The notes: a model not told the origin generated them from the letters alone. DNA of 64,000 bases from IMGVR_UViG_3300020122_000238:124001-188000, one strand, 5' to 3'; positions 13,166 through 60,517 are shown, counted from the first letter of the stretch. Program-made: numbers and translations.

Positions 13166-13204
13166 CATGGGGGTCCTACAGAGCGGACCCCCATGAGCTC
13201 AACC
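13166..13204 (-). promoter_or_regulatory. Class B promoter-like element (GGTTGAGC variant) overlapping a 14-bp hairpin
   Basis: GGTTGAGC-N16-TGTA-GGACCCCC-ATG; inverted repeat 13163-13176/13185-13198. Confidence 0.55.
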
Positions 13205-13710
13205 TAGAAGAGCGAAAGCTGCTCGGCGATCTTCTCGACGGGCTTCGTCTCCCAGACGATCTTCCCGTCGATCTTCCGGCCGATCTTGGCCCCGTTCTTC
13301 CTCCAGTAGTCAACGAACCTCTCGATCCCGACCTTATCGAGGCCAGTCCAGGAAGGCCGCACCATCTTCATGGCAGCCAGCCCTGCATACATGCCTTCGA
13401 GGCCCATGGCCATGGGCCCAAAGATGTCAGGGCAGGCATAGACCGAGTCCTTCGGGATCCGCGTGTCGAGCATGGGGGCAGCGAAGACGGCCCGCACGAT
13501 GTTGTCGTTGTCGAGGTTGTCGATGATGTAGACGTCGTCGACAACGTTCCCCAGCTCCCTCTCGAAGTCGTCGTGGGGGATGGAGACCGTGCTCTGGCCG
13601 TACCCCTCTTGAGGGCCGGGATAGCCCGTCAAGCCGCTCAGACCTCGCGTGAGGACAAGGTAGCGATCGTCGCGGGGGGCTTTGGGCGGCGTCTTCTTCT
13701 TGGTAGCCAT
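13204..13710 (-). CDS. Hypothetical protein ending in a beta-clamp-binding motif
   Basis: 168 aa, C-terminus EQLSLF; directly follows a class B element. Confidence 0.65.
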   Translation of the reverse strand: MATKKKTPPKAPRDDRYLVLTRGLSGLTGYPGPQEGYGQSTVSIPHDDFERELGNVVDDVYIIDNLDNDNIVRAVFAAPMLDTRIPKDSVYACPDIFGPMAMGLEGMYAGLAAMKMVRPSWTGLDKVGIERFVDYWRKNGAKIGRKIDGKIVWETKPVEKIAEQLSLF

Positions 13711-13746
13711 GGGGGTCCTACAAGACGAAAGGAGGCGGGATCAACC
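13708..13746 (-). promoter_or_regulatory. Class B promoter-like element
   Basis: GGTTGATC-N16-TGTA-GGACCCCC-ATG. Confidence 0.7.
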
Positions 13747-13749
13747 CCT

Positions 13750-14133
13750 TCAGTGAATGACGGCAGAAACCTCGTGCTCGACCTGGAAGCGAGCACGGAC
13801 CTTCGCGATCGTGACCCGGAGGCCAGCGTCCGCAATCGGGATCAGCTCGTCCCCCACCTGGCGGAAGCGGGTAGGGACACAGGTCACTTTCCAGCCGGGG
13901 CCCACCACGGATTCGAGCCCGAGGCCTTCGAGGACCGAGAGGACGAAGCTTCGAGCATGGATCTCGGCCGCACAGGGGGTTGCCCCACGACGTTCCTTGC
14001 GCTCTCGGGCCAGCTTGACCAGAGGAGCGCACAGCTCTTCCAGGACAGCCTGAGAGACCTTTTTGGTCGGAGACCATAGCGGAACCGCTTCCGGCCACTC
14101 CGCGTCGATGACCTCGGTGTCGATGCTTTTCAT
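13750..14133 (-). CDS. Hypothetical protein (MKSIDTEV...)
   Basis: Start chosen at the ATG after the class B element. Confidence 0.55.
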   Translation of the reverse strand: MKSIDTEVIDAEWPEAVPLWSPTKKVSQAVLEELCAPLVKLARERKERRGATPCAAEIHARSFVLSVLEGLGLESVVGPGWKVTCVPTRFRQVGDELIPIADAGLRVTIAKVRARFQVEHEVSAVIH

Positions 14134-14170
14134 ATTTTGCTCTACAGCAGTGGGGCCCCCCCGATCAACC
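14131..14170 (-). promoter_or_regulatory. Class B promoter-like element
   Basis: GGTTGATC-N16-TGTA-N9-ATG. Confidence 0.7.
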
Positions 14171-14197
14171 GCTCTCTGAATTTCTACACCGCTCTCT

Positions 14198-14203
14198 GGT
14201 GTA
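14198..14203 (+). promoter_or_regulatory. Class A element GGTGTA
   Basis: 12 nt before ATG 14216; an inverted copy (TACACC) lies at 14185-14190. Confidence 0.6.
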
Positions 14204-14215
14204 GACAGGACTTCA

Positions 14216-15973
14216 ATGACCGCCCTATCCCCGCAAGACACGACGGCTTACGAAACGCTGAAGAAGGTTCGAGCGTCTACAACTGTTGCGTTGAAGCCCA
14301 CCCCCATGCTCAAGGCGAGCATCGTCGGCCTTGACGGACAAGCTCAGGATTTTCGCCTACGGTATTACCAGGTTCAGGGGGTCTTCCACCTTCTGACTAT
14401 GACCAGGATGATTTTGGGGGATGGGACGGGGCTCGGAAAAACGATCCAGGTGATCGCCGCTCTTTGCTATCTGCGTCCCCGGGAGCCCAACAACCGGGTC
14501 ATCATCGTCACCCCCAAGAGCGTTCTACGTCAGTGGGGAGAAGAGATCGAACGCTTCACGACGGGGGTCAAGTGCTACGTCGTGAGTGGGTCTCTTGAAG
14601 AACGCAAAGCGGTCTACGAGAAGTGGGCCAAAGCGCCTGTGGGGGATGACGCCCCCCTCTCCGTGCTCATCGTCAACTACGCGATCATCGTTCGAGACTG
14701 GGATCAGGGTAGCCAGTCTATTCCCGGGAAGACTCCCAAGGAGAAGCCGACCGTGCTGCCCGGCTACCTGGACGGGATCACTCGGGGAATGGACCTGGTC
14801 GTCATCTACGATGAGGCGACGGCATTCAAGAACCATTCAACCAAGACGTGGCAGACGTGCCGCTATCTCTCGGATCGAGCGAAGAGGTGCTACGGGCTCA
14901 CGGCGACGCTTCTCAAGAACAACTTGATGGAGGGCTTCTCGATCTTCAAGGTGATCGTCCCTCGCCTCTTTGCGACGAAGACTGCCTTCCTGGCAGCCTT
15001 CTGCATCGTCGAGCAAAAGAGGGTGGCGGGGAACCGGAAGATCCCCATGGTCGTGGGGTACAAGAACCTGGAAGCGTTCCGGGAGAGGATTGACCCCTAC
15101 TTCCTCGGGCGTCCGAAGCACGCGGTGTCTGCGGAGCTACCTGTGCTCACCACGAAGCAGATCATCGTGGAACTGTCGGCCGCCGAGGACCAGAAGTACC
15201 AGGAAGCCCTCTCGGGGGTCCTCGAAATGGGGGACGGGTCCACCAAGGACTACGAGGAGCACAAGGCCTTCGTCTCGCTCTGCTACTGCCAACAGGTCGT
15301 CGACTCGCTCACCTTGCTCAAGTACAAGGCGGGGGACGAGCTGCTCCCCGGCGGGTATGAGCGGCTCGATGCGGAGATCGCCAGCCACACGATCGCGAAG
15401 CTCGGGAGCAAGGAGCAGGCGTTCCAGGACCTCATTCTGGACGAGCTGGATGGTGAGAAGGTCATCGTCTACACCCGCTTCGAGTCTCTTGTGGGGCGCC
15501 TACAGGCCATCCTCAAGGAGAAGGGGATCAGGAGCGGGCGCATCACGGGGAAGGACTCGGATTCGGCTCGCCGAGCCCATCAGAAAGAATTCCAGAACCT
15601 CGATTCAGACATGAAGGTCATCTTCATCACGGACGCCGGAAGCGAGGCCATCAACCTCCAGGCGGCCAGCGCCCTCGTCTTCTACGATGCCCCCTGGAGC
15701 TGGGGCAACTACGTGCAGACCCTTGGGAGGCCGATTCGCATCGGGAGCCCTCACCCCAACGTGTGTGCTTACCACATCGTGGCTGTTCGTCCCAAGGCGG
15801 CGGGGAAGAACAAAAAGACGATCGACCATCACATCCTGACCCTCCTCACGAGTAAGAAGAACCTCGTCGACAAGGTTCTCGGAGAGGCCGCCGTTGGGGC
15901 TCTCGACTTCAAGAAGGATGGCGTTGGGGCTGGGACGAAGGAGCTGCTCAAGCAAATGCGTTCCGGCGAATGA
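14216..15973 (+). CDS. SNF2-family (SF2) helicase/ATPase
   Basis: LGDGTGLGKT Walker A, YDEA Walker B, LTAT motif III, AINLQ, QTLGRPIRIG motif VI. Confidence 0.9.
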   Translation: MTALSPQDTTAYETLKKVRASTTVALKPTPMLKASIVGLDGQAQDFRLRYYQVQGVFHLLTMTRMILGDGTGLGKTIQVIAALCYLRPREPNNRVIIVTPKSVLRQWGEEIERFTTGVKCYVVSGSLEERKAVYEKWAKAPVGDDAPLSVLIVNYAIIVRDWDQGSQSIPGKTPKEKPTVLPGYLDGITRGMDLVVIYDEATAFKNHSTKTWQTCRYLSDRAKRCYGLTATLLKNNLMEGFSIFKVIVPRLFATKTAFLAAFCIVEQKRVAGNRKIPMVVGYKNLEAFRERIDPYFLGRPKHAVSAELPVLTTKQIIVELSAAEDQKYQEALSGVLEMGDGSTKDYEEHKAFVSLCYCQQVVDSLTLLKYKAGDELLPGGYERLDAEIASHTIAKLGSKEQAFQDLILDELDGEKVIVYTRFESLVGRLQAILKEKGIRSGRITGKDSDSARRAHQKEFQNLDSDMKVIFITDAGSEAINLQAASALVFYDAPWSWGNYVQTLGRPIRIGSPHPNVCAYHIVAVRPKAAGKNKKTIDHHILTLLTSKKNLVDKVLGEAAVGALDFKKDGVGAGTKELLKQMRSGE

Positions 15974-15974
15974 C

Positions 15975-15980
15975 GGTGTA
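15975..15980 (+). promoter_or_regulatory. Class A element GGTGTA
   Basis: 11 nt before ATG 15992. Confidence 0.6.
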
Positions 15981-15991
15981 GGGGTAGGAAC

Positions 15992-16627
15992 ATGGTTCCC
16001 TCCAACATCGCGGACAACTTTCGTGCCGACCCTCAACTTTTTATCATGACCCGTTGGACTCAGATAAATCGGTCCAACCAAACATCAATGCACCCTTTAG
16101 TTGAAATCGATGTGGTTGAAATAGTCCACACCAAGGATGGGTCTTCACTATGTGTTGGTGTGGGCAGTAGCGGGCCTCTTCGATCATTTTGGGTGTTGAA
16201 TACGGAGCTTCTATCCGATACCTCCGCATTCAACTACATCGGAACAGCCTCAGAACTCGCGTTCATACAACTTCACACCTGGTTGTACCGTCTCGAATTG
16301 CTGTGGCCTACCCAAAGGAGAATCGGGCAGATCCGAAGCATTGAGGGTAATCTCGTCCGACTGGCCGATACGATCCCCCCCACGGATGCCTCCTATTTCT
16401 ATGAGGCCTATGATGCTATTCTAAGGACCTTCAGAGTAGCCTCGTCGGAAGAAGTCATTGAGGCTTCTCGGCCACCCTCAGAAACTGAGCAGATACAATT
16501 GACCGTGATTGAGGAGGGGATTGGCCCTCTTCCACCTAATCCTATCCCGAATGTTATCGAAGAACTCCCCAGGACCTATGGTCGCCTGACGTCGTGGGAC
16601 ATCCTGGACTTCGAGTCGGACATCTAG
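15992..16627 (+). CDS. Hypothetical protein with TSWDIL-acidic tail
   Basis: 211 aa ORF after a class A element. Confidence 0.6.
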   Translation: MVPSNIADNFRADPQLFIMTRWTQINRSNQTSMHPLVEIDVVEIVHTKDGSSLCVGVGSSGPLRSFWVLNTELLSDTSAFNYIGTASELAFIQLHTWLYRLELLWPTQRRIGQIRSIEGNLVRLADTIPPTDASYFYEAYDAILRTFRVASSEEVIEASRPPSETEQIQLTVIEEGIGPLPPNPIPNVIEELPRTYGRLTSWDILDFESDI

Positions 16628-16628
16628 C

Positions 16629-16634
16629 GGTGTA
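16629..16634 (+). promoter_or_regulatory. Class A element GGTGTA
   Basis: 12 nt before ATG 16647. Confidence 0.6.
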
Positions 16635-16646
16635 GGGACGAAGCGA

Positions 16647-17540
16647 ATGCCTGACGAGAAAAAGGTCTGCTCCAAATGTGGGGGTACGGGGCGAATCGAG
16701 GTGGACGACCTTACGGTCCGCCAGTGCATCTGCGCGTTTGCCCGAGCAATGAAGGAACACCTCGGGGCAGAGATCGCTCTAGCCCCGTCCATCACGTCGA
16801 GCCCGCTGTTCGAGATGGGCGGCGTGGACAAGGACCCCAAGACCGATCTAACGAGCAAGAACCTCTTCCTCAAAGGGGCCTGGGAAGACCTTCTCCCTCA
16901 TCTGAAATGTGCTCTTGTCGGGAAAGGTCTTTTTTTCTCCTTCAAGGTCTTGACCGACGAGCGGCTCAAGATCGTTTACGTTGGGGATGAGAGCTACAAG
17001 GCTCGCTCCAAGAGCAAGCGAGATGAGTCTCCTACCTTCAACTCGCTGACGGACATCTTGGGCCCGGATGTCGACCTTGTGATCCTACGTATCGGTAAAT
17101 TGGGGTACCCCAATAAAGCCATGCCCGGGATTCTCAAGGAAGCTCTCATGCTTCGTGAAGCTGCCTCGAAAGCTACTTGGATCAACGAGACGCCAGATAG
17201 CTTTTTCGGTCCCGGTCACTTCTCCTACGATGAGAACGTGGCTGAGTACATCGAAAAGAGATTCGCGATCATGGACCTGACGAACAAGAATCGTACGAAG
17301 GAAGCTCCCCAGGGGTGCTACATTCCTTCCGAGCCTGTCGACGTGGATATGAACTCTCCGCCGCAAGCACAGATCGTCACGGAAAAGGCATGGGAATCAG
17401 CTCCGAAGCCTCGGTTCGAGAGCCGTCCTTCGAGTGCCAACTCGGATGGGGCGTTGGGGGATGGCGGCGGAGGGTACAAGCCGAAGTACAAGCCGAAGAA
17501 GTACGGTGACAACGGTGGAGGAGGGGGTCCGCTCGGATGA
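16647..17540 (+). CDS. Zn-finger protein, possible degenerate DnaC-like helicase loader
   Basis: N-terminal CSKCGGTG...CIC; directly upstream of and coupled to the helicase; no intact Walker A seen. Confidence 0.45.
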   Translation: MPDEKKVCSKCGGTGRIEVDDLTVRQCICAFARAMKEHLGAEIALAPSITSSPLFEMGGVDKDPKTDLTSKNLFLKGAWEDLLPHLKCALVGKGLFFSFKVLTDERLKIVYVGDESYKARSKSKRDESPTFNSLTDILGPDVDLVILRIGKLGYPNKAMPGILKEALMLREAASKATWINETPDSFFGPGHFSYDENVAEYIEKRFAIMDLTNKNRTKEAPQGCYIPSEPVDVDMNSPPQAQIVTEKAWESAPKPRFESRPSSANSDGALGDGGGGYKPKYKPKKYGDNGGGGGPLG

Positions 17541-19000: not shown

Positions 19001-19001
19001 G

Positions 19002-19238
19002 ATGCCCGTACTCGAAAATGAAGAACAGCTTCGGATTCATGCCTTTCTGTCTGTAAGCGCAGTGCAGAGCATCTTCCCAGGGCTGACAGACAAGGAGTAC
19101 GAGGAGTTGGCATTCGTCTTTTTGGAGCTTGAGGCAGAAGACTTGGAGCCCATGACTCTACCTGGGTATGCTCTGTCCTGTACGATCCCTATCCCGAGCC
19201 TCAAGACAGCGTGGGATTACCTGGAGGAGGACCTGTGA
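19002..19238 (+). CDS. Small protein with TAWDYL-acidic tail; paralogue of the next gene
   Basis: QSIFPG...PGY...TAWDYL aligns with QNIFPG...PGY...TSWDHL. Confidence 0.55.
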   Translation: MPVLENEEQLRIHAFLSVSAVQSIFPGLTDKEYEELAFVFLELEAEDLEPMTLPGYALSCTIPIPSLKTAWDYLEEDL

Positions 19239-20518: not shown

Positions 20519-23415
20519 TGGCTGACGAGTTCGATGACGACGATTTTGATTTCTTGAACTCCCCAGCTCCTCTCGGACGCAAGGAGCTGGCCCTCACCGC
20601 GATGGCAAAACAGGCGATGAATCGCCCCGTCGAGTCTTTCGAGGATGAGGGTGGGCTCGACGACTTCATGTCGAACACCGGGATGGTCCGGGAACGCGAT
20701 GTCCCGGACCCGACGAAGCCTTGGATGCGTTTCCACGAGTTCGTGCTCGTGAAGACTATCGAGGAGGTTCGAGCAATCGTCGATGCGGCCATCGCTGCCA
20801 AGAACTGCTCGCTCGACCTGGAAACCCAGGGCCTCGACAACCGCATCTTCTACGATGCGGAGGGCAAACCTCAGACGGTTCACAAGATCGTGGGGTTCTG
20901 TATCTCGTACAACTCCAAGACGGGCTACTACATCCCTGTCCGCCACAGGACCGGCGAGGGGATGCCGGATCTGAACGTCAAGCCGAGCGAGGTCGAGGCG
21001 GAAATCCGTCGCCTATGTCTCGCCTCGCAGCCGACCCCCAAGGGCTCTCCGAAGGACCTCCTTTCCTTCAAGGAGTTCGAGGAGGGGCCTCAGCTCGTCA
21101 TCAACTTCTGGAACGCCAAGTTCGATCAGGAGTTCCTCTTCCCCATTACGGGGATCGACTGGTGGCACCCTGACTCCTTCGAGGATGGTTGCCTGGCTGC
21201 CTTTACGGTCTACTCCGATGATTGGCTCGGTCTCAAGGAGAATGCGAAGGAGAAGCTCCGCGTCTCTGAAGAGGTTACGGGATCGGATGGGAGGCGCTTG
21301 AAGGTCGAATACGCCTACGAGATGATCGAGCTGAAGGAGCTGTTTCTCAAGGGCCGTCCGATCCAGTTCGATGCTCTCTCGCCGGATGAGCCGGGCGTGA
21401 TCAAATACGCCTGTTCAGACGCCATCTGCACGAATCTCCTCTGCCTACGAGACGACCTCGTGAAGCTGTGCCGGGACAAGTACGGCTTCACCTACCGTCT
21501 GGAGAAGCAAGTTTCCCAAGTGGCTCGGGTCATGGAACGCAATCGTGCGATGGTGAACCGAAACAAGGTCAAGCTCCTCTTGGACAAGCACACCAAGAAG
21601 CGCGACGAGCTTCTCGTGCTCATCGATGCTCTCGCCAAGAGCAAGGGCTTCCACGGTTTTGATCCCGCGAGCACCAAGCAGCTCGGGGAGTTCCTCTTCG
21701 GGGAGAAGGGTCTGGATATCTCCCCGAAGCCCGAGAAGAACGAGAAGTCACAGCAGTACAAGACCGACGGAGAGACGCTCGAAAACCTCACGAAGGACAT
21801 GGGCCCCAATGCCCCCATGATCCTCCAGTGGATGGTCAAGCTCCGCGAAGAGGAGAAGCTCCTCGGGACCTATCTTCACAACCTCTACGAGAACTACGAC
21901 AAGCACGCGATGCCTCTGTCGGAGATGCGTTTCGACTGGAAGCAGACGGGAGCTGCCACGGGGCGCTTCTCAGCTCCCGGCCGGAAGGATCACATCGACC
22001 ACGGCTTCAGCGGAGTCCCTATTCACGGGATTCCCTCGACGTCCGATCTCCGGACGTGCTTCGAGGCCCGTCCGGGCTACGCGATGTGCAAGTGCGATTA
22101 CGCAGGGCAAGAGCTGCGGATCGTTACGAACCTCTCGAACGAAAGCGTCTGGATCAAGGAGTTCAAGGAAGGGTCGGGCGACCTTCACAGCATCACCGCC
22201 AGGGCCTTCTTCAACAAGGCGGACATTACCAAGGACGAGCGGAAGATGGGCAAGATTGCCAACTTCGCTCTCGTCTACGGTGGTGGCCCGGCTGCCATCA
22301 TGCGGGCAACGGGCTGTGACAAGGTCGAGGGGCAACGCCGGAAGGCGGCCTTCGATAAGGCTGTCCCGACCTTCGCGAAGTGGGTCAAGCAGCAACATAC
22401 GAAAGTCAAGAGGGACAAGGGTGTCTGGACGGCCTTCGGTCGTTGGATCGCCATCCCCGATGCCAACGTGATGGAAGGGGAGATGCTCAACGGTCGGATC
22501 TTGTCGTCGCAAGACGCGAACATGATCCGAGCTGCCTGTGAGCGACACGCGACGAACTACCCGATTCAGGGGAGCGGCGCGGACATTATGAAGATCGCTA
22601 TGGTTCTTCTTCACAAGGAATTCCACCGCCGGGGCTGGCTCCGAAATGGGGGTGACGATTCGGTTCGGATGCTCCTCACGGTTCACGACGAGCTTGTCTT
22701 CGAGATTCGCTACGATCGTGTGGCGGAAGCCATCCCCCTCATCGTCGAGCAGATGGAGATGCCGACGAAGATGGCAAGGCCTCCCTACTCGCCTGTGTGG
22801 CAGGTCCCTCTTGTTGTCGAGCCCTTGATCGGCTTCAACTGGGGCGCGGGCTACGGGATCGTTCCCTTCAAGGAGGGGTATGTCCTCAAGGAGTTCGAAG
22901 TGCTCCTCGGCGGATTCGTCTACTCTCTCACCCGCGTGGTCGAGAAGGAAGGCGAGATTCTGGAGGAGGAAGTCATCGTCAAGACGGAGGAGAAGAGTGG
23001 CAAGAAGGTCTTCACCATCCGGTTGAAGATCGACCCCCCGTGGCTCAAGGGTGGATCCAGCTCACCTCCGCCGCCTCCTTCAACTCCGCCGTCCTCGGAT
23101 AGCCGTGAGAGGATTGCGCCCCCCTCTTCACCGATGGCCCCCCTGTCTCAACAGACGTTGAAGCAGGATGGGCCGCCGCCCGAGGTGGTCACGATTCGAC
23201 TGCGAGAACTGTCCCCGTCCACGCTTCGGCAAGTCCGTGGAGTGTGCGCGCAGTACATCGATCCCGACAATGGATCGCTTCTCCGGCTGATTGACCCGAT
23301 GTCGGGTAAGACGATCATTGACCCCAAGCTCGGAGTCAAGATCAACCCCGAGATGGTTGCGGGGGCTCTCAAGGAGATGCATCTTTCCGACGGACAGTAT
23401 CTTCCCAGTTCGTAA
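20515..23415 (+). CDS. polA: Family A DNA polymerase with 3'-5' exonuclease
   Basis: Exo DLETQG, NAKFD, YACSD; pol TGRFS, DYAGQELR, KIANFALVYG, IQGSGADIMK, VHDE. Confidence 0.93.
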   Translation: MMADEFDDDDFDFLNSPAPLGRKELALTAMAKQAMNRPVESFEDEGGLDDFMSNTGMVRERDVPDPTKPWMRFHEFVLVKTIEEVRAIVDAAIAAKNCSLDLETQGLDNRIFYDAEGKPQTVHKIVGFCISYNSKTGYYIPVRHRTGEGMPDLNVKPSEVEAEIRRLCLASQPTPKGSPKDLLSFKEFEEGPQLVINFWNAKFDQEFLFPITGIDWWHPDSFEDGCLAAFTVYSDDWLGLKENAKEKLRVSEEVTGSDGRRLKVEYAYEMIELKELFLKGRPIQFDALSPDEPGVIKYACSDAICTNLLCLRDDLVKLCRDKYGFTYRLEKQVSQVARVMERNRAMVNRNKVKLLLDKHTKKRDELLVLIDALAKSKGFHGFDPASTKQLGEFLFGEKGLDISPKPEKNEKSQQYKTDGETLENLTKDMGPNAPMILQWMVKLREEEKLLGTYLHNLYENYDKHAMPLSEMRFDWKQTGAATGRFSAPGRKDHIDHGFSGVPIHGIPSTSDLRTCFEARPGYAMCKCDYAGQELRIVTNLSNESVWIKEFKEGSGDLHSITARAFFNKADITKDERKMGKIANFALVYGGGPAAIMRATGCDKVEGQRRKAAFDKAVPTFAKWVKQQHTKVKRDKGVWTAFGRWIAIPDANVMEGEMLNGRILSSQDANMIRAACERHATNYPIQGSGADIMKIAMVLLHKEFHRRGWLRNGGDDSVRMLLTVHDELVFEIRYDRVAEAIPLIVEQMEMPTKMARPPYSPVWQVPLVVEPLIGFNWGAGYGIVPFKEGYVLKEFEVLLGGFVYSLTRVVEKEGEILEEEVIVKTEEKSGKKVFTIRLKIDPPWLKGGSSSPPPPPSTPPSSDSRERIAPPSSPMAPLSQQTLKQDGPPPEVVTIRLRELSPSTLRQVRGVCAQYIDPDNGSLLRLIDPMSGKTIIDPKLGVKINPEMVAGALKEMHLSDGQYLPSS

Positions 23416-23455
23416 TCCTGGCATATCCTGAAACGTTCGGGTATTATCCTCCCTC

Positions 23456-24001
23456 ATGGCTTCGGAACGTCGAGATCTGTACGGAGAATGCAACGTGGAC
23501 GGGGCGACGCTCGACCAGTTCACGGCCGAGTGCTGTTCCCGTTGCATGACTTCGGAGTGTTCTCGGAGCCTCTTGGGTGGGGGTAAGTTCGAGCGTCGTA
23601 TACAGAGCTGGGAGGATCGGTTGTTCACCAACCCTCCGCAGTTGGACCCCAAAGACCCGCGCTACATGAAGATCCAGGGTCAACGCTTCCTGACCCTGGA
23701 TGTCGGGCGCACCCCCGAGATTCGATCCTCGGGGTGGATCGACCCCCTGGCACCAGCTGAAACACAGGAGGCGGCACCCATTTCCCCGCCTTCTCTCATT
23801 TCGGTTCCGGCTGCCCCCAGCTCGAAGTTGGTCCTCCCGCGGCGGCTATCCGGGGCAAATGCTCCGGATCAATCGGGAAAAATGGTGGGGGCCCCGGCGG
23901 CTCCTTCAAGAGATCCGTGGGCCGCTTCTTCTCTTCCTCCCACAACGGATCCAACTATTTCGCCGGGAGGCACAGTCAAGCTCCGCGGTTCTGGTGTATA
24001 G
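23456..24001 (+). CDS. Hypothetical protein (Cys cluster, Pro-rich tail)
   Basis: 181 aa ORF, CCSRCxxxEC. Confidence 0.55.
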   Translation: MASERRDLYGECNVDGATLDQFTAECCSRCMTSECSRSLLGGGKFERRIQSWEDRLFTNPPQLDPKDPRYMKIQGQRFLTLDVGRTPEIRSSGWIDPLAPAETQEAAPISPPSLISVPAAPSSKLVLPRRLSGANAPDQSGKMVGAPAAPSRDPWAASSLPPTTDPTISPGGTVKLRGSGV

Positions 24002-30032: not shown

Positions 30033-30911
30033 TTGGACGTGGTGACTGAAGAGTTCCTCCGAAAGAAGTACCTTGGCGATCTGCTCTCCCTTCGGCAGAT
30101 CGCTTCTCTTTGTGGTGTGGCTGTCGGCACGATCCGCTACCACATGAAGCGCTTTGGGATTCCTCGCCGAACGAAATCCGAGGCCCTCTCTGGGGACAAG
30201 AACCCCATGCATGGGAAGACGAAGTCAGATGCGACCCGGCGGAAAACCTCAGAGACCCTTCAAGTCACAAATAAGGATCCTGATGTAAAGGCCCGCCGAA
30301 GCGCCTCAACTTCGGGGATCCGAAATCCCATGTATGGGAAAACACACACAGAAGAGGTAAAGGAAGCCGCACACACAAGGCTGAATTCTATACGACACAC
30401 CCCAGACTTTGTGTCAGCTCAAAAAGCTGCAATGCAACGACTGGAAGTCCGCCAAGCTCTCTCGGAGAGCGCCTCCCAAAGAGTGGGGGAGAAGAACCCC
30501 TTCTTTGGGCATGAGCATAGCTCCGAGACCAAGCAGAAAATAGCTCAAGCCAACCGAGGTCGTTTTCTAGGGGAGAAGGGTTCCAACTGGAAGGGCGGGA
30601 AGACTCGACTCTCAGCTCTGATTCGGAACTCCGAACCGGCAATCCGATGGCGAAAGGATGTCTTCAAGAGGGACGCCTATACTTGCCAGAGGTGTGGTCA
30701 AATTGGGGGTCAACTACAGGCGGATCACATTCAACCTCTTGCGGGGCTCCTCGACGAGCACTGCATCAAGACCCTCGAAGATGCGTTCAACTGTCCCACC
30801 CTCTGGGATTTGACCAACGGTCGGACGCTCTGCATTTCGTGTCACAAAAAGACGCCTTCCTACGCGGGCAACTATCAGAAGAATTATCCTGCGTTCAAGG
30901 TCGCGGTGTAG
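30033..30911 (+). mobile_element. Free-standing HNH homing endonuclease with NUMOD3-like repeats
   Basis: NPMHGK/NPMYGKTH/NPFFGHEHS repeats, CQRC, DHI, NGRTLCISCH; ends FKVAV like thyA. Confidence 0.85.
30905..30910 (+). promoter_or_regulatory. Class A element GGTGTA overlapping a stop codon
   Basis: 10 nt before ATG 30921. Confidence 0.6.
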
Positions 30912-50377: not shown

Positions 50378-50382
50378 GTTTC

Positions 50383-50388: not shown

Positions 50389-50398
50389 AGATCGGAGG

Positions 50399-51893: not shown

Positions 51894-51899
51894 GGTGTA
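51894..51899 (+). promoter_or_regulatory. Class A element GGTGTA
   Basis: 10 nt before ATG 51910. Confidence 0.65.
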
Positions 51900-51909
51900 G
51901 CCACGAGGG

Positions 51910-52908: not shown

Positions 52909-52909
52909 C

Positions 52910-53152
52910 TCAGAACTGGGGGAGGAGCTTGGCGGGGGCGATCTGCCAGCCGGGGATGACATCTCCCATGCTGAGGGGGCTGAGAGTCAGGGAGTTACGC
53001 CCCAGAACCTCAGCCAACCAGCCCACATGGTAGCAAGTACTTCCGATACTGACGGCGAGGGCATCGAACAAGCGGTCGCCGTCAACTGTGTACTCCCGCC
53101 CGTTGAACTCGAACTCGTACTTATCCGTCATCGTGTCGAGCTTGGCCTTCAT
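52910..53152 (-). CDS. Hypothetical protein
   Basis: 80 aa directly after a class B element. Confidence 0.6.
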   Translation of the reverse strand: MKAKLDTMTDKYEFEFNGREYTVDGDRLFDALAVSIGSTCYHVGWLAEVLGRNSLTLSPLSMGDVIPGWQIAPAKLLPQF

Positions 53153-53188
53153 GGGGGTCCTACGAGGCCAAGCTCGACACGATCAACC
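53150..53188 (-). promoter_or_regulatory. Class B promoter-like element within a 19-bp inverted repeat
   Basis: GGTTGATC-N16-CGTA-GGACCCCC-ATG; arms 53130-53148/53165-53183. Confidence 0.7.
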
Positions 53189-53247
53189 GGGTATCAGGTC
53201 GGGGGATGAACATTCGGGACTCCTCTGTGGGGTGTGGCAAAGCCCGG

Positions 53248-53622
53248 TTACGTAGCCAGTACACGAGCAGGGGCGAGGCGATCAATTTCGGAAGGTAAAA
53301 TCCTCCGAAGGGTGCATTCGAAGTCCTCCAGGGAGATTTTGAGCGGCATGTCGAAATAGTGGTGATTCCACTTCCCTGAGAAGGGGTTGAGCCCAGATGT
53401 CCCGACGACAGCCTTTGCCGCGTCGGGGTCGTTGAACTGGCAGGCGACCCAGTTGCCATAGGTGGCAATGCTGAGATACCCAGCTCGGGTCGTGATCTCG
53501 TAGTAGTTGGGGAGCCACTCCTTGCCTTGAGAGATCCCACCCAGACGAGTGACGATCTCTACCACCCCGGTATCGAAGGCAGCCTCTTGAACCGCTTTTT
53601 GCTTTTTGGTCAACTTCTTCAT
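53248..53622 (-). CDS. Hypothetical protein, paralogue of 53619..53912
   Basis: AFDTG..EIV.RLGG, T.AG.L, C.F.DP.AA, G.WNH.Y shared. Confidence 0.65.
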   Translation of the reverse strand: MKKLTKKQKAVQEAAFDTGVVEIVTRLGGISQGKEWLPNYYEITTRAGYLSIATYGNWVACQFNDPDAAKAVVGTSGLNPFSGKWNHHYFDMPLKISLEDFECTLRRILPSEIDRLAPARVLAT

Positions 53623-53912
53623 GGCAGGACCTTTCGGAGAGTCTCCTCGAATTCCTTCAACGCCGTGCGGATGGACTTTCCGAGGTATTCGTGATTCCAC
53701 TCGCCCGTCTGAGGGTCGACAGGGTCGACAGTGAGCTGGCTGGCCGCCCTGGGGTCGTCGAACCGACAGTCGACATAGTCCCACTTCGGAAGAACGCGAA
53801 GGGGTCCCGCCAGGGTCTTGATGTAGAGGGCCTCTCGGACGCCTTGCCAGCCTCCGAGACGTAGAACGATCTCGATGATGCCCGTATCGAAGGCGTTTTT
53901 TCGGGTGCTCAT
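53619..53912 (-). CDS. Hypothetical protein, paralogue of 53248..53622
   Basis: Same shared blocks; follows a class B element. Confidence 0.65.
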   Translation of the reverse strand: MSTRKNAFDTGIIEIVLRLGGWQGVREALYIKTLAGPLRVLPKWDYVDCRFDDPRAASQLTVDPVDPQTGEWNHEYLGKSIRTALKEFEETLRKVLP

Positions 53913-53948
53913 GGAGGTCCTACAGGAGGACGGGGCATACGATCAACC
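53910..53948 (-). promoter_or_regulatory. Class B promoter-like element
   Basis: GGTTGATC-N16-TGTA-GGACCTCC-ATG. Confidence 0.7.
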
Positions 53949-54317
53949 CTTCGGCTTCTTCAGGATCAGGGCGAGCTGTGCCGCGAAAGAGACCTGTTCC
54001 CTGGTCGGGCCCGGCTCACCCTTCGCGATCTTCTTCAGCTCCTTCTGGACAGCCTTGACAGCTCGCTTTGCGGGGGCTTCCTTCGACCAGCCGACCAGGC
54101 GATCCTCAACGGATTGCCCTGCGAAATCCTTCGGGTTGGCCAGGAAACAGGCCTGGAAGAGCCTGCAATGAAGGCTTTCATCCATGAAAGCTGCCCGAAG
54201 AGGCTCACTCTCGCCGTCTTCCGAGATGAGGTAGACACGGAAAGCCTTGGGGTCATCCCACTCCGCGAACACACCGTTGATTTTGCTAGCGTCTTCTTTG
54301 ATCTTGGAGGTAGACAT
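53943..54317 (-). CDS. Hypothetical protein (MSTSKIKED...)
   Basis: Start chosen at the ATG after the class B element. Confidence 0.6.
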   Translation of the reverse strand: MSTSKIKEDASKINGVFAEWDDPKAFRVYLISEDGESEPLRAAFMDESLHCRLFQACFLANPKDFAGQSVEDRLVGWSKEAPAKRAVKAVQKELKKIAKGEPGPTREQVSFAAQLALILKKPKG

Positions 54318-54353
54318 GCTTCTCTTACACACCGGAAACCTTGAGGATCAACC
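54315..54353 (-). promoter_or_regulatory. Class B promoter-like element
   Basis: GGTTGATC-N16-TGTA-N8-ATG. Confidence 0.7.
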
Positions 54354-54387
54354 GGAAAGTATTGATAGCGGCCCTCTCCGTAGAGAC

Positions 54388-54660
54388 ATGGCTTCTCGTG
54401 AAATGACCGCTAGGGGGTTCTTCGATGTGGGGGACCGGATTCTGTACGGCAAGTACAAGAACAAGAAGGGCCGGATCGTCTCCGTGGGGCTCGACGTCAA
54501 GGGAAACCCCATCATCGAGATTGAGCCCGTCCCCAAGGGCCGGAAGAAGAACCAGATCATCGGGCTCTACAAGATATGGCATGACCCTCCGCCGGCACTT
54601 GCTCAGAAGGTGCTCGCTCGTTACACCCAGTCCGCCATGCTCGACGACGGGGAAGACTGA
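54388..54660 (+). CDS. Small KOW/SH3-like protein with C-terminal KVLARY tag
   Basis: FDVGDRILYGKYKNKKGRIV. Confidence 0.5.
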   Translation: MASREMTARGFFDVGDRILYGKYKNKKGRIVSVGLDVKGNPIIEIEPVPKGRKKNQIIGLYKIWHDPPPALAQKVLARYTQSAMLDDGED

Positions 54661-54663
54661 ACC

Positions 54664-56544: not shown

Positions 56545-56554
56545 TGTAGCACCC

Positions 56555-57316
56555 ATGCCTAGCCTGCCCTTCCGAGTAGCTGCCCAACATGTCGTCTCCC
56601 GTCGGGGGGCCGCTCTACGATCCGTCGTGGCAAGGGGAAGCTCTGGGGGGATGCCACTTCCTCCGGAGATGGCGGACCACCCTGCTCTGACCGCGGGGCT
56701 GACGAAGATTTATCCCAACCCCAAAGAGGTCGGTGGCTACCTCGGGGTCATCGACGGCGGATCTTGGATCGCCTTCGTGGGTGTGGATGGGAAGACTGAG
56801 CTATGGACCTCCCGCGAACCCAAGGGCGGCACCATCGGGAATCCCTATGTGTTCCAACGGGACGACATCTCTTCGGCGTCGACCGTGACCATCCCGAACC
56901 CTGTGTTCCAGTTCTACTCCCCCATCGAACTCAAGATTATGGGGGTCACGCAACGGGTCGCTGCTCGCTACAAGAAGTCCTCCGATGACTCTCTGTCTGA
57001 GGTTGTCGAGAGATACATGATGGCAACCTCACAATATCTTGGAAAACGTCTCGGTGGGTCCAAGTCCGGCGTCATGAAGTCCCAGTTCCCCAAGTGGAAA
57101 ATCGGGGTCTCCCTGAGCAACCCGTTAGTTTTTGACCACGTCATCGACGTGGTCCTCGATGGGTGTACATTGGTGTTTTCAGCATACCAATACACCCCTG
57201 GTTCGACGGGACTGCAACTCATCAAAAAAGCCACAGCTTCCGTGAACTCGTCTCCCAGTGACTTCGTTGAAGTCTTGGCGAGGGCGTACGAAAATCAAGC
57301 TTCGGACCTGTACTGA
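56555..57316 (+). CDS. Two-module hypothetical protein with RVAAQH and RVAARY tags
   Basis: Motif at the N-terminus and again mid-protein. Confidence 0.55.
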   Translation: MPSLPFRVAAQHVVSRRGAALRSVVARGSSGGMPLPPEMADHPALTAGLTKIYPNPKEVGGYLGVIDGGSWIAFVGVDGKTELWTSREPKGGTIGNPYVFQRDDISSASTVTIPNPVFQFYSPIELKIMGVTQRVAARYKKSSDDSLSEVVERYMMATSQYLGKRLGGSKSGVMKSQFPKWKIGVSLSNPLVFDHVIDVVLDGCTLVFSAYQYTPGSTGLQLIKKATASVNSSPSDFVEVLARAYENQASDLY

Positions 57317-57324
57317 AGGCAACC

Positions 57325-57621
57325 ATGAACGATCTCACGCTTAGGGTTGCGGCCCGCTATGCTCTTGCTTCGGGGGTGGTCCTTGTCAAAAGCAAGGTGA
57401 AGGGGAATTACAGAACAGTAGATGGTGCCTACTGGTTTCGCCCCATGGAGACGCATAACAACAACACTCGTCCTGAACGCTATGATGTCATTCGGATGAG
57501 TGACCGGGTTACAGTTGCTGAGGGTATGACCCTCGCTACCGCTAAAAGGCGATTTGAGGCTTATCTCAAGGATGTTGAGACTGGGTCGCCGCTTCAAAAA
57601 CTTCCTTATGATCGTGGTTGA
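57325..57621 (+). CDS. RVAARY-tagged small protein
   Basis: MNDLTLRVAARYALA. Confidence 0.6.
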   Translation: MNDLTLRVAARYALASGVVLVKSKVKGNYRTVDGAYWFRPMETHNNNTRPERYDVIRMSDRVTVAEGMTLATAKRRFEAYLKDVETGSPLQKLPYDRG

Positions 57622-57664
57622 AATACAAGAATATCGGTAACTTCCCTCTAGAAAAATGAAAGCA

Positions 57665-59032
57665 ATGAGCACGTCTCAATCTCTTCGCGTTTTGGCGAAG
57701 TATAAAGCCAAAAAGAAGGTCAAGAATCAAGACGGCGAGGACATGACCGTCTACGAGTATTCCGACAAGCAAATCGCCAACCGGAACCGGGAGAAGGCGA
57801 AGCGAATCGAGAAGCTCCGAGGCAAGATCGACGACGTCCGCTCGAAGGCCAAGAAGGACCTGAAGTCGAGCGACCCCGAGAAGATGCTCACGGCACTCGC
57901 CGTGATGCTGATGGACCACACGTATGAAAGGGTTGGGAACGACGAGAGCGCGGACGACGGGCACTTTGGGGTCACGGGCTGGCAGAAGGACCACATCACC
58001 TTCAGCAAGGGCGGGGCGACCATCAAGTACGTCGGCAAGTCCGGCGTCAAGCACGTCAAGAAGGTGACCGACTCGACCATCACCAAGGCGCTCAAGGATG
58101 CCTGTGAGGCGGCTGAGAACGAGACGTCTTGCATCTTCGAGTGGGACGGGGGCAAGGTCTCAGCCGAGAAGGTGAACGCCTACCTGAAGGAGTTCGACAT
58201 CTCGGCGAAGGATATCCGTGGGCTACATGCAAATGTCGAAATGCAGGAACAGCTCAAGGCTGCCAGGAAGAAGGGCGGCAAGCTTCCCGAGGACCCCAAG
58301 AAGCGGGATAAGCAGCTCAAAGAGGAGTTCAAAGAAGCACTCGAAGTCACGGCGGAAGCCGTAGGCCACGAGCCTGCCACGCTGAAGAGCCAATATTTGG
58401 TCCCTGGAATGGAGGAAGATTTCTTGAAGGACGGCGTGATCAACGAGAAGCTCCACACGAAGACGGCAGATCTCAAGCAGGGGTGCGCCGGCTGTAGTTG
58501 CCACGCTAAACCCGAGGAGCACGACCAGTCGGAACGGGTGATTGCTCGTTTCTTGAGCCAGGACAAGAAAGCGGTGGGGTATTACGATACCGATCGTGAT
58601 GAGACTTGGGTGGATCCTACAAAGGACCTCGACAAGTGGCTTGATAGGCTTCTACGCTTGACTCAAGAGGCCAAACGAGATGCCCCAGGAGAGCATCGAC
58701 GTGGAGAAGGCCCTGGGAAGGCCTATCTAGAGCTTTCCAGCTTTATGGGAGACCGGGAGCACACGAAGTGGTACAAGTTCTTCTATGCTTCCACTGTTCA
58801 GAAGGATGTCTCGTCCGCTATAGTCCCCAACGACTATAGCGATCCCAAGATGGCGCAAGACTACAGTCAATGGCTCGACAAGTTGGAGGACGCTATCAAG
58901 GACGCGGACGCGGAAATCCGTAGGGATGACCGTCCTGGAGACAAGATGTTCGAGCTGAAATGGATCATGAAGAACTACAGTAAAGAGAAGTGGTATGCCT
59001 ATTACTTCATGCAGTCCATGACATTCCGGTGA
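57665..59032 (+). CDS. DNA topoisomerase IB with C-terminal extra domain
   Basis: RVGN, GKSG, KDIR, VGH.....KSQY match the catalytic R-K-R-H-Y set. Confidence 0.85.
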   Translation: MSTSQSLRVLAKYKAKKKVKNQDGEDMTVYEYSDKQIANRNREKAKRIEKLRGKIDDVRSKAKKDLKSSDPEKMLTALAVMLMDHTYERVGNDESADDGHFGVTGWQKDHITFSKGGATIKYVGKSGVKHVKKVTDSTITKALKDACEAAENETSCIFEWDGGKVSAEKVNAYLKEFDISAKDIRGLHANVEMQEQLKAARKKGGKLPEDPKKRDKQLKEEFKEALEVTAEAVGHEPATLKSQYLVPGMEEDFLKDGVINEKLHTKTADLKQGCAGCSCHAKPEEHDQSERVIARFLSQDKKAVGYYDTDRDETWVDPTKDLDKWLDRLLRLTQEAKRDAPGEHRRGEGPGKAYLELSSFMGDREHTKWYKFFYASTVQKDVSSAIVPNDYSDPKMAQDYSQWLDKLEDAIKDADAEIRRDDRPGDKMFELKWIMKNYSKEKWYAYYFMQSMTFR

Positions 59033-59147
59033 TTGCTCACCAGGTTCTTGATCGCCGACAAAGTCATGGTCGCCTACGGTCCCGGCCGAGTGCCGGAGCA
59101 AGTCCGACACTGGCTCCACATCGCCATCCCTGGGAAAGTCAAGTTCG

Positions 59148-60080
59148 CTAGAACTCTTCCATAAGGGCGTTCATGTAGGTAAAGGGGTCCTCTTGGTGCT
59201 CCGAGATGAAGGGGGTGAGCCCCTCCCTACGCCCCACCACCACAAGCTCTCCAACAGCCTCCCGCTTCGCTCCGTCCGAGTTGATAGAGCGCCCCATCTT
59301 GACCTCGTGGATCTCCCATCCAGCGTACAGCTCCCTCACGAGGGGCGTATCCGAGTTTGAGAGAACGACAGCCACACCACGCTCTGCCAGCTCGGCGAAG
59401 CTCTTGGCGAGGGCTCTCTGTGCTTCCTCGTCGAATCCTTCTGAGGTGTACCCCGTGAAGCTCGCGGTCTCAGAGACCGGCACGTAGGGGGGATCGAAGT
59501 AGACGAGGTCTCCCGGCTGAGCCTTGGAGATACTGTCCTGCCAGGAGTTGTGACGAACAAATAGTTCGTCTTGTCTTGAATCGATCTCCCGGAGTACCTG
59601 AGCACAAGCCGAGATATTGGCCGCATCACAAATCTGGGCCATCTCGTCCTTTCCCCAAGAAGAGTTGAATTGCCCCTTCTTGTTGGTACGGTACAGGCCG
59701 TTGAAGCAGGTCTTGTTCAGGAAGATCATCCTGACAGCGCGGGTGACCGGCTCCAGAAGAGCCGGATCCATCTGTCGCCAGGTCGTGAACGTTTCCTTGG
59801 GGGCGATGCGGTACGCTTCCGCAACCATGAGGAGGTCTCGAATCACCTCCTCACCGAAGCCGCCGATCATCAGGTACGCGTTGACCAGCTCGGCATTCAG
59901 GTCGGACAAGACGGCCTTCTCGAACCTCTTTTCTTGAGCGAGCGCCCAGAAACTAGCGCCACCCCCAAGGAAGGGTTCGTAGTAGGTCCCAATCTTCTTG
60001 GGGTAGATTTTGAGGAGGAAGGGAAGAAGGGTGGTCTTGCCACCAACCCATTTGAGAAAGGGGCGCGCGGGGGAGGACAT
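59148..60080 (-). CDS. dam: Dam-family (D12 class) DNA adenine methyltransferase
   Basis: FLKWVGGK, EPFLGGG, FNGLYRTN, YFDPPY, LSNS; target specificity not proven. Confidence 0.88.
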   Translation of the reverse strand: MSSPARPFLKWVGGKTTLLPFLLKIYPKKIGTYYEPFLGGGASFWALAQEKRFEKAVLSDLNAELVNAYLMIGGFGEEVIRDLLMVAEAYRIAPKETFTTWRQMDPALLEPVTRAVRMIFLNKTCFNGLYRTNKKGQFNSSWGKDEMAQICDAANISACAQVLREIDSRQDELFVRHNSWQDSISKAQPGDLVYFDPPYVPVSETASFTGYTSEGFDEEAQRALAKSFAELAERGVAVVLSNSDTPLVRELYAGWEIHEVKMGRSINSDGAKREAVGELVVVGRREGLTPFISEHQEDPFTYMNALMEEF

Positions 60081-60092
60081 ACCCCTCCTGGC

Positions 60093-60098
60093 TACACC
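60093..60098 (-). promoter_or_regulatory. Class A element GGTGTA
   Basis: 12 nt before methylase ATG 60080. Confidence 0.6.
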
Positions 60099-60100
60099 GC

Positions 60101-60394
60101 CTATCGTTCGTAGAAGCACGAAGCGCTGGGTACGCGCTTCGTGAGCTTGAGCCAGTAGTTCCCATCCTGCTGGTCACCCCCACCCTTCTCGACGTGCCAC
60201 CCACCTTCGGTCTCGTACTTCGTCTTCAGCTCGGCGAGGATACGAGTCGTGAACTGCGGTCCGAAACTGACGAGGATAGTGGACCCCGGCTGCCACTCCT
60301 TTTCGATCACATCATCGATGTGATCTTCCCCCTGCTTGATGATTTGGGTGTCCAGGACGCGGGTTCTCTCTTCGATTTCGCTTGCTTTGATCAT
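60101..60394 (-). CDS. Hypothetical protein
   Basis: 97 aa. Confidence 0.55.
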   Translation of the reverse strand: MIKASEIEERTRVLDTQIIKQGEDHIDDVIEKEWQPGSTILVSFGPQFTTRILAELKTKYETEGGWHVEKGGGDQQDGNYWLKLTKRVPSASCFYER

Positions 60395-60478
60395 GGTCAG
60401 TTCCCCACGCCATTCGAGTGCAGGCTACGAGCTTCCTCGTGACACAGGGATCGCTGGCGTGACTCTCGACCCCCATTT

Positions 60479-60517
60479 CATGGATCTCCTACAGGGCGCC
60501 CGGCTTGGGGATCAACC
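60479..60517 (-). promoter_or_regulatory. Class B promoter-like element
   Basis: GGTTGATC-N16-TGTA-GGAGATCC-ATG; the ATG opens an 18-aa ORF. Confidence 0.7.

What the first reader, a model, noticed from the sequence alone, without database searches (positions are those of the whole stretch)
13166..60517. Class B bipartite promoter GGTTGATC-N16-YGTA-N8/9-ATG, seven copies, all on the minus strand
Seen at 13166-13204 (GGTTGAGC), 13708-13746, 14131-14170, 53150-53188, 53910-53948, 54315-54353 and 60479-60517. The 16-nt spacer is invariant and four copies have GGACC[CT]CC before the ATG. Nearly every small gene in the two minus-strand islands has its own copy. It shares the GTA core with class A but adds a TTGA-type -35. 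Inference: early, leaderless host-takeover genes.
Basis: partly seen in the sequence, partly recalled or inferred. Interest (0 to 1): 0.7.

Follow-up and report, generated by a model that had tools for sequence, protein, structure and literature searches.

The report
Phage promoter class making leaderless mRNAs
The seven repeats are real copies of a two-box promoter specific to one lineage of huge phages, set so that transcription should begin at the start codon of small, fast-evolving accessory genes; it is a new variant of a known kind of phage promoter.

Summary
GGTTGATC-N16-YGTA occurs 7 times in the window, all on the minus strand, against 0.47 expected. With up to one mismatch it occurs 41 times in the 275-kb virus record; a 350-kb relative (G001) has 81 exact RGTTGATC-N16-YGTA sites. 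Reversed-pattern controls give 0. The 16-nt spacer is strongly preferred (36 sites, against 0-3 for other lengths). Between the two phages (~89% identical) the boxes changed at 2 of 264 positions and the spacers at 65 of 352.

The full consensus is RGTTGATC-N16-TGTAG(G/A)A-N4-CATG. An A lies 9 nt after TGTA even where no ATG follows. Taking that A as +1 puts TTGATC at -34..-29 and TGTA at -12..-9. That is the register reported for phiEco32 sigma gp36 promoters (AATGTA centred at -11.5).

My reading is a sigma-70-family (ECF-like) bipartite promoter producing leaderless or 1-3-nt-leader mRNAs. It heads about 90-aa genes that are mostly ORFans, plus an ArdC-like anti-restriction gene and the lineage's divergent ECF-like sigma gene. 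A second class (GGTGTA-N10-ATG, no -35 box) heads replication genes.

No RNA data exist, so the start sites, the "early" timing and the factor that reads the promoter remain inferences.

The parts
13166..13204 (-). Class B copy 1: GGTTGAGC-N16-TGTA-N8-ATG. The -35 box is a variant, and 12 nt of the spacer are complementary to the start-codon region.
   Evidence: Its gene has lost about 200 nt compared with the G001 orthologue.
13708..13746 (-). Class B copy 2: GGTTGATC-N16-TGTA-N8-ATG, heading the ORF 13204-13710 (168 aa, no family match).
   Evidence: The boxes are identical in the G001 orthologue while the spacer has 3 changes.
14131..14170 (-). Class B copy 3, with a 9-nt gap to the ATG, heading the ORF 13750-14133 (127 aa). 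It lies back to back with the class A promoter of the + strand helicase gene.
53150..53188 (-). Class B copy 4 (CGTA variant of the -10 box), heading the ORF 52910-53152 (80 aa). The spacer forms a 16-18-bp inverted repeat with codons 2-7.
   Evidence: predicted hairpin of -44.8 kcal/mol.
53910..53948 (-). Class B copy 5, heading the ORF 53619-53912 (97 aa), which is followed by the overlapping ORF 53248-53622.
   Evidence: In G001, +2 and -2 indels in the spacer keep its length at 16 nt.
54315..54353 (-). Class B copy 6 (TGTAAG), heading the ORF 53943-54317 (124 aa).
60479..60517 (-). Class B copy 7. In this genome the ATG opens only 18 codons, and the 97-aa ORF 60101-60394 follows in the same frame after a stop.
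   Evidence: The G001 orthologue opens a 113-aa ORF.
53248..53287 (-). Weak eighth site, AATTGATC-N16-TGTAC, with no start codon after it.
   Evidence: score 16.4 against a median of 33 for true sites. The G001 orthologue has perfect boxes and also lacks an ATG.
14198..14218 (+). Example of class A: GGTGTA-N12-ATG, heading the helicase gene 14216-15973. Further class A heads precede the genes starting at 16647, 28101, 30921, 32365, 32854, 39376 and 51910 (+), and the minus-strand genes 59148-60080 and 62067-62435 (starts at 60080 and 62435).

Best explanation
Class B is a genuine, selectively maintained promoter of the sigma-70-family two-box type. It is specific to one lineage of huge phages with genomes of roughly 475 kb.

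The host core RNA polymerase, carrying a sigma factor, is proposed to bind RGTTGATC through sigma region 4. Exactly 16 bp downstream it would bind TGTAG through sigma region 2. Transcription would then start at the conserved A that lies 9 nt after TGTA. In 65 of 116 copies that A is the A of the start codon, so the mRNA is leaderless. In most of the remaining copies it leaves a leader of 1-3 nt.

Each copy drives one or two small, fast-evolving accessory genes. These include an ArdC-like anti-restriction protein and the phage's own divergent ECF-like sigma factor.

Shown here: the motif, its rigidity, its conservation and its position before genes.

Inferred: the start site, and the reading factor. 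The factor is most likely the phage ECF-like sigma (about 0.45); otherwise a host factor (about 0.3). 'Early' timing is also inferred (about 0.45).
For: Abundance: 7 sites in the window against 0.47 expected. With up to one mismatch there are 41 in the record; G001 has 81 exact RGTTGATC-N16-YGTA sites; reversed-pattern controls give 0.

Spacing: a 16-nt spacer in 36 sites, against 0-3 for each length from 12 to 21.

Selection: in 22 orthologous pairs the boxes changed at 2 of 264 positions and the spacers at 65 of 352 (Fisher p = 6e-15). Compensating indels preserve the 16-nt length.

Position: 96 of 827 called genes carry a site, and the gap from GTA to the start codon is 8 nt in 57 of them and 9-11 nt in 23.

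Start-site signature: in the 51 sites with no ATG at positions 37-39, A37 still occurs in 51% (background 21%, p = 2e-6) and C36 in 51%.

Geometry: with A37 as +1, TTGATC lies at -34..-29 and TGTA at -12..-9. phiEco32 gp36 promoters have AATGTA centred at -11.5, with starts 6-8 bp after tAATGTAtA (PMC12276001, PMC8948821). The sigma of phage 7-11 reads a two-box promoter with a 16-bp spacer (PMC8948821).

No polymerase of its own was found: no Rpb1 domain in G000, no T7-like polymerase, and no DxDGD motif in any called protein.

Sigma candidate: all 9 members of a 302-aa protein family match the sigma70-ECF model (best E = 3.4e-7, below the curated cut-off). A class B promoter precedes that gene in three lineages.

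The genes are real: orthologue differences fall 259/207/553 on codon positions 1/2/3.

Contrast: genes without either motif show a weak GGAG signal at -11..-8, and class B genes do not need one.
Against: There is no transcript evidence at all: no RNA run was listed.

One G001 copy ends 4 nt before a tRNA confirmed by Rfam. A start 9 nt after TGTA would fall inside that tRNA.

The TGTAGGA stretch often contains AGGA or GGAG 5-8 nt before the ATG, so it could also act as a ribosome-binding site on read-through transcripts.

The sigma assignment is weak. The matches are below curated cut-offs, the structure model is poor (pLDDT 57) and the fold search gave no significant hit.

If the phage sigma reads class B and its own gene is driven only by class B, something else must provide the first molecules.

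The -35 box lacks the AAC motif typical of ECF promoters.
Confidence: 0.62

Rival explanations
1. Class B is the true early class and is read by machinery already present at infection: the host holoenzyme with one of the host's own sigma factors, or a factor brought in by the virion. One of its products, the phage ECF-like sigma, then switches the polymerase to class A (GGTGTA) promoters of replication genes. This is the classical early-to-middle cascade seen in SPO1 and phiEco32.
For: In L155 and L159 the sigma gene has only a class B promoter, which creates a bootstrapping problem if the sigma reads class B. Class A heads ligase, helicase, clamp-loader, methyltransferase and dCTP deaminase genes, which are typical middle genes. 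Class A persists in the lineage whose sigma is only 33% identical, where no class B site was seen in 21 kb. The class B gene set looks like an early set. No third, canonical promoter class was found in the remaining intergenic regions.
Against: The -10 box TGTAG(G/A) has no A at -11 and no T at -7. Housekeeping sigma factors rely on both, so no known primary sigma would be expected to read it (established knowledge of sigma-70 -10 recognition). The host is unknown, so its consensus cannot be checked. The motif occurs in multiple copies only in this phage lineage across IMG/VR.
Confidence: 0.3
2. The element is not a promoter. GGTTGATC is an operator for a phage DNA-binding protein, or part of an RNA-level signal, and TGTAGGA is a ribosome-binding site. 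The genes are transcribed from upstream, and the spacer-to-start-codon hairpins regulate translation.
For: About 8% of sites carry an inverted repeat of 8 nt or more between the spacer and the start-codon region, against 1.5% in controls (p = 7e-5). Some reach 16-18 bp. AGGA or GGAG is frequent after TGTA. Copies follow the stop codon of the previous gene directly, with no terminator, so read-through transcripts must exist.
Against: An operator or ribosome-binding site does not explain an invariant 16-nt spacing to an invariant TGTA, nor the conserved C-A where no ATG follows. Copies also precede tRNA genes and stretches without an ORF. No conserved promoter-like sequence lies upstream of the box (information content about 0). 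The hairpins occur in only a minority of sites.
Confidence: 0.08

Closest known systems
Middle and late promoters of phage phiEco32, read by the phage sigma gp36 (tAATGTAtA)
   Same: They share the TGTA core in the same register: AATGTA centred at -11.5, so TGTA at -12..-9, with starts 6-8 bp after the element (PMC12276001, PMC8948821). In both cases a phage-specific motif unlike the host consensus is used by host core polymerase with a phage sigma-like protein.
   Different: phiEco32 promoters are a single element with no -35 box, and gp36 lacks region 4. Here a strongly conserved octamer lies 16 bp upstream, and the AA before TGTA is absent. No sequence similarity between the 302-aa protein and any solved sigma factor was detected. 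Coupling to the start codon is not reported for phiEco32 in the text I read.
Late promoters of phage 7-11, read by sigma gp47 (GTAAtg-N16-aCTA)
   Same: A two-box promoter with a fixed 16-bp spacer, recognised by a divergent phage-encoded sigma factor (PMC8948821).
   Different: The box sequences differ. Those promoters number eight and head late genes. Here 40-80 copies per genome head small accessory genes.
Bacterial ECF (group 4) sigma promoters, such as sigma-E (GGAACTT-N16-TGTCAAA) and sigma-W (TGAAAC-N16-CGTA); consensus sequences recalled from memory
   Same: A rigid 16-17-bp spacer, a long G-started -35 box, a short -10 box of the (T/C)GT(A/C) type, and a copy in front of the sigma gene itself (autoregulation).
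   Different: The -35 box has no AAC motif. The regulon has about 80 members, each mostly a single ORFan gene, and starts are fused to the start codon.
T4-type early promoters and leaderless phage mRNAs such as lambda cI from PRM (recalled from memory)
   Same: Many individually promoted small ORFan genes. Leaderless mRNAs are known in phages.
   Different: T4 early promoters follow the host sigma-70 consensus and their mRNAs carry leaders with Shine-Dalgarno sites. Here 234 of 827 called genes (28%, classes A and B together) have a TGTA-containing motif where the leader would be.

Membership tests
Sigma-70-family two-box promoter | Two conserved boxes separated by a non-conserved spacer of nearly fixed length (16-18 bp) | tested here: met
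   A 16-nt spacer in 36 sites against 0-3 for other lengths. Boxes changed at 2 of 264 positions and spacers at 65 of 352 between the two phages.
Sigma-70-family two-box promoter | Lies upstream of genes and points the same way | tested here: met
   96 genes carry a site, with the start codon 8-11 nt after GTA in 80 of them. Sites occur on both strands.
Sigma-70-family two-box promoter | Transcripts start about 6-9 nt downstream of the -10 box | not testable with these tools
   No RNA run was listed. The only indirect evidence is the conserved C-A 8-9 nt after TGTA.
Housekeeping (group 1) sigma promoter, TTGACA-N17-TATAAT | A -10 hexamer with A at -11 and T at -7 | tested here: not met
   The -10 region reads TGTAG(G/A), with no conserved A-11 or T-7 in any register that keeps the ATG inside the transcript. 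The consensus scanner finds no sigma-70-like site in either island.
ECF-type promoter | A -35 box containing AAC | tested here: not met
   The box is RGTTGATC, or GATTGATC in the L155 lineage.
ECF-type promoter | A short -10 box of the (C/T)GT(A/C) type at a rigid 16-17-bp spacing | tested here: met
   TGTA in 116 of 118 sites and CGTA in the other 2, at a 16-nt spacing.
ECF-type promoter | A cognate ECF sigma gene preceded by the same promoter | tested here: inconclusive
   A divergent sigma70-ECF-like gene is preceded by class B in G001, L155 and L159. Whether that protein reads class B is untested, and its family matches are below cut-off.
phiEco32 gp36-type promoter | The single element tAATGTAtA, with TGTA at -12..-9 and no -35 box | tested here: inconclusive
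   The TGTA core fits, and so does the register if A37 is +1. The flanking AA and tA are absent and a -35 box is present (PMC12276001, PMC8948821).
Leaderless mRNA | The 5' end of the transcript is the A of the start codon | not testable with these tools
   An ATG lies exactly 9 nt after TGTA in 65 of 116 sites. No transcript data are available.

The most novel reading that the evidence does not exclude
A lineage of huge phages expresses over a quarter of its genes (classes A and B) as leaderless mRNAs. The proposed reader of their shared TGTA -10 core is a self-amplifying, divergent ECF-like sigma factor, which would have to be delivered with the virion or primed by an unknown route. In this reading, the spacer-to-start-codon hairpins found at some copies silence translation of read-through transcripts, so that only RNAs started at each gene's own promoter are translated.
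Probability: 0.15. Interest if true: 0.7.

Novelty: new variant of a known kind. Interest (0 to 1): 0.45.

Why it matters
Huge phages are known almost only from metagenomes, and their gene-expression programmes are essentially unmapped. This motif gives a sequence-only handle on a regulon of about 80 members in an uncultured phage of roughly 475 kb.

It marks the probable accessory or anti-host gene set. It corrects start-codon calls. It also predicts two things that can be tested directly with core RNA polymerase and one recombinant protein: an unusually heavy reliance on leaderless translation, and a phage sigma with TGTA specificity.

It extends the small list of phage-sigma promoter types (SPO1, T4, phiEco32, 7-11) with a two-box form that shares its -10 core with phiEco32.

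Tried and rejected
- RNA evidence: two searches for sequencing runs. The first listed only DNA runs holding 6-7% of the sampled words, and the RNA search listed none. No reads were laid.
- GenBank phages: no near-identical DNA. The closest DNA polymerase is 35% identical, in an uncultured 485-kb phage.
- A polymerase encoded by the phage: no Rpb1 domain in G000, no T7-like polymerase (though that control rang in no genome) and no DxDGD motif. Three large unknown proteins in the window match nothing in PHROGs or the PDB.
- Fold of the 302-aa sigma candidate: the model is poor (pLDDT 57) and Foldseek gave no significant hit, although several sigma factors appear among the non-significant top rows. 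A profile search of the PDB found nothing.
- The 236-aa protein with two sigma region-4-like domains: rejected as the class-B-specific factor. It has 693+ homologues at 60-76% identity on many huge-phage contigs that lack the motif, and it lies next to exonuclease and terminase genes.
- A third, host-like promoter class: none found in the 173 intergenic regions that lack both motifs.
- GATC inside the -35 box as a methylation switch: GATC is neither avoided nor enriched genome-wide (observed/expected 0.95), so there is no support.
- Host identification: the phage tmRNA is the standard one-piece type, and one protein-atlas query was uninformative. The host remains unknown.
- Literature search for the box sequence returned only primers.
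- The 377-kb contig containing L155 could not be searched as a whole.
Full report
**Context.** The window is bases 124001-188000 of a 275.3-kb IMG/VR virus record (G000). CheckV rates it 58% complete, which implies a phage of roughly 475 kb. Its GC content is 58%. The + strand of the window carries replication genes: a helicase, a DnaB-like helicase, a family A DNA polymerase and clamp-loader-like ATPases. The reported repeats lie in short minus-strand islands between these genes.

GGTTGATC-N16-YGTA, allowing one mismatch, gives exactly the seven reported sites, all on the minus strand. Dinucleotide-preserving shuffles give 0.47. The whole record has 41 such sites on both strands, and the reversed pattern has none. 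A spacer of 16 nt occurs 36 times, while each other length from 12 to 21 occurs 0-3 times. A weight matrix built from all copies ranks the seven sites first in the window. It adds only one weak site at 53287(-), which has no start codon.

**Relatives.** A scan of IMG/VR found multiple copies only on three contigs from two sister samples. The largest of these, G001 (350 kb), has 81 exact RGTTGATC-N16-YGTA copies. It is about 89% identical to G000 over 81% of G000's length. In 22 orthologous site pairs the twelve box positions changed twice in 264 comparisons, and the sixteen spacer positions changed 65 times in 352 (p = 6e-15). At one site a +2 and a -2 indel together keep the spacer at 16 nt. 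More distant relatives were reached through a shared sigma-like protein. They carry the same architecture with a slightly different first box: GATTGATC on a 377-kb root-metagenome contig, and mixed forms on L159.

**Anatomy.** Across 118 copies the consensus is RGTTGATC, then S, a spacer with a weak T19 C20 and C24, then TGTA, G, R, A, four unconstrained bases, and C36 A37 T38 G39. Of 827 genes I called in the two genomes, 96 have a copy upstream. The gap from GTA to the start codon is 8 nt in 57 of them, 9 nt in 9, 10 nt in 3 and 11 nt in 11. Among 116 exact copies, 65 have ATG at positions 37-39. In the other 51, A37 and C36 are each still present in 51% (backgrounds 21% and 29%). These 51 include copies in the tRNA region of G001 that have no ORF behind them.

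A pyrimidine-purine step at a fixed distance from the -10 box, independent of the ATG, is what a transcription start looks like. With A37 as +1, TTGATC occupies -34..-29 and TGTAGG occupies -12..-7, which is the ordinary sigma-70-family geometry. The -10 box has neither A-11 nor T-7, and a consensus scanner finds no sigma-70-like site in the islands.

**What the promoter drives.** Products of class B genes have a median length of about 90 aa, against about 175 aa for class A. Of 88 products scanned, few have a Pfam hit (13 families in all). The hits are ArdC-N anti-restriction, GmrSD_N, an HD domain, a P-loop kinase, IrrE/M78, SWIM, DUF2314 and a cytidylyltransferase-like domain. The ORFs are real: differences between orthologues fall 259/207/553 on codon positions 1/2/3. 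They evolve faster than other genes, with a ratio of synonymous to non-synonymous codon changes of 1.1, against 1.8 for class A genes and 2.1 for the rest. Copies often begin directly at the stop codon of the previous gene, and no intrinsic terminators were found.

**A second class.** The most enriched hexamer upstream of genes is GGTGTA, found in 135 of 827 upstream regions against 15 expected. It has no upstream box, and the start codon follows 10 nt later, with a range of 9-12 nt. Genes with neither motif show a weak GGAG signal at -11..-8. The intergenic regions that lack both motifs contain no third motif.

**Which polymerase reads it.** I found no phage RNA polymerase, so the host core enzyme is the likely engine.

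Two sigma-like proteins exist. The first is a 236-aa protein with two region-4-like helix-turn-helix domains (G000 23072-23782). It turned out to be a core gene of hundreds of huge-phage contigs that lack the motif, and it lies near the terminase gene. I set it aside.

The second is a 302-aa protein in G001, in a part of the genome missing from G000. It belongs to a family of nine proteins, all of which match the sigma70-ECF model, though below the curated cut-off (best E = 3.4e-7). The family has a strongly conserved region-2.4-like segment and a C-terminal helix-turn-helix. Its structure model was too poor to confirm the fold. A class B promoter precedes this gene in G001, L155 and L159, but not in the lineage where the protein is only 33% identical. 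In that lineage I saw class A sites only, within 21 kb.

**Comparison with known systems.** The phiEco32 sigma gp36 reads tAATGTAtA. AATGTA is centred at -11.5 and starts lie 6-8 bp after the element (PMC12276001, PMC8948821). That places TGTA at -12..-9, exactly where it falls in class B if A37 is +1. The sigma of the related phage 7-11 reads a two-box promoter with a 16-bp spacer (PMC8948821). Class B therefore combines features already seen in phage-sigma promoters, but with different boxes, a far larger regulon, and starts fused to start codons.

**Verdict.** The motif is a real promoter-type element (about 0.85). Transcription starts at or within a few bases of the ATG (about 0.6). The reading factor is unresolved. 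The phage ECF-like sigma is favoured by the -10 core and by the rigid ECF-like geometry. A pre-existing factor is favoured by the bootstrapping argument, because in two lineages the sigma gene has only a class B promoter. 'Early' timing fits the gene content but has not been shown.

**Open conflicts.** One G001 copy ends 4 nt before a tRNA confirmed by Rfam, so a start 9 nt after TGTA would fall inside that tRNA. Another copy ends 12 nt before a tRNA-SeC gene, which fits the model. About 8% of copies have a spacer complementary to the start-codon region, up to 18 bp at 53188. Such a hairpin could form only in read-through RNA or in DNA, and its role is unknown.

Noticed in passing
window 14198-14218 (+), and upstream of the genes starting at 16647, 28101, 30921, 32365, 32854, 39376, 51910 (+) and of 59148-60080 and 62067-62435 (-): A second and more frequent promoter-like class: GGTGTA-N10(9-12)-ATG with no -35 box. 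It precedes 138 of 827 genes in the two genomes and heads replication and nucleotide-metabolism genes. A subclass reads GGTGTACTAGA, even though CTAG is about two-fold depleted genome-wide.
   Followed up: partly
window 53150-53188 and 13166-13204 (-); G000 203479 (+); G001 286260, 313054 (-): In about 8% of class B copies the 16-nt spacer is complementary to the start-codon region, with stems of 8-18 bp and a predicted energy of -44.8 kcal/mol at 53188. The stem would form only in read-through RNA or in DNA.
   Followed up: partly
window 12224-13204: The only copy with a variant -35 box (GGTTGAGC) precedes a gene that has lost about 200 nt compared with its 96-aa orthologue in G001. The resulting 314-aa minus-strand ORF runs antisense to a + strand gene. 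That + strand gene appears split (11679-12644 and 12287/12410-13078), whereas G001 has a single 459-aa gene.
   Followed up: partly
window 60394-60481 (-): A 14-nt insertion relative to G001 makes the promoter-proximal ATG open only 18 codons. The 97-aa ORF follows in the same frame after a TAG stop.
   Followed up: partly
window 53248-53287 (-); G001 56930-56957 (+): A class B-like site with no start codon behind it in either genome, with perfect boxes in G001. It may drive a short non-coding transcript.
   Followed up: no
L138:2600-16900 and L139:3400-5750 (G001 242.6-265.7 kb, minus strand): An array of about 40 tRNA genes plus a standard one-piece tmRNA (tag ANDNALVPMQMAA), interspersed with class A and class B sites. 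One class B site ends 4 nt before a confirmed tRNA.
   Followed up: partly
G000 23072-23782 (L009:1291-2001, +): A 236-aa protein with an acidic N-terminus and two sigma region-4-like helix-turn-helix domains. It has 693+ homologues at 60-76% identity on huge-phage contigs of up to 570 kb, and it lies between exonuclease and large-terminase genes. It could be a core transcription factor or a small-terminase-like DNA binder.
   Followed up: partly
window 30033-30911 (+): An HNH/NUMOD3 homing-endonuclease gene inside the replication module.
   Followed up: no
alignment A3, columns 125-153 (P0006, P0007): Two members of the ECF-like sigma family carry a Cys-rich insertion (CxxC...CxxC) between the region-2-like segments. 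It resembles a DnaJ-type zinc ribbon.
   Followed up: no
G000 221851-221917; G001 13175-13241, 288023-288098, 297429-297484, 316916-316976: Class B copies often occur as back-to-back divergent pairs. In the G000 pair the two -35 boxes are 11 bp apart.
   Followed up: no
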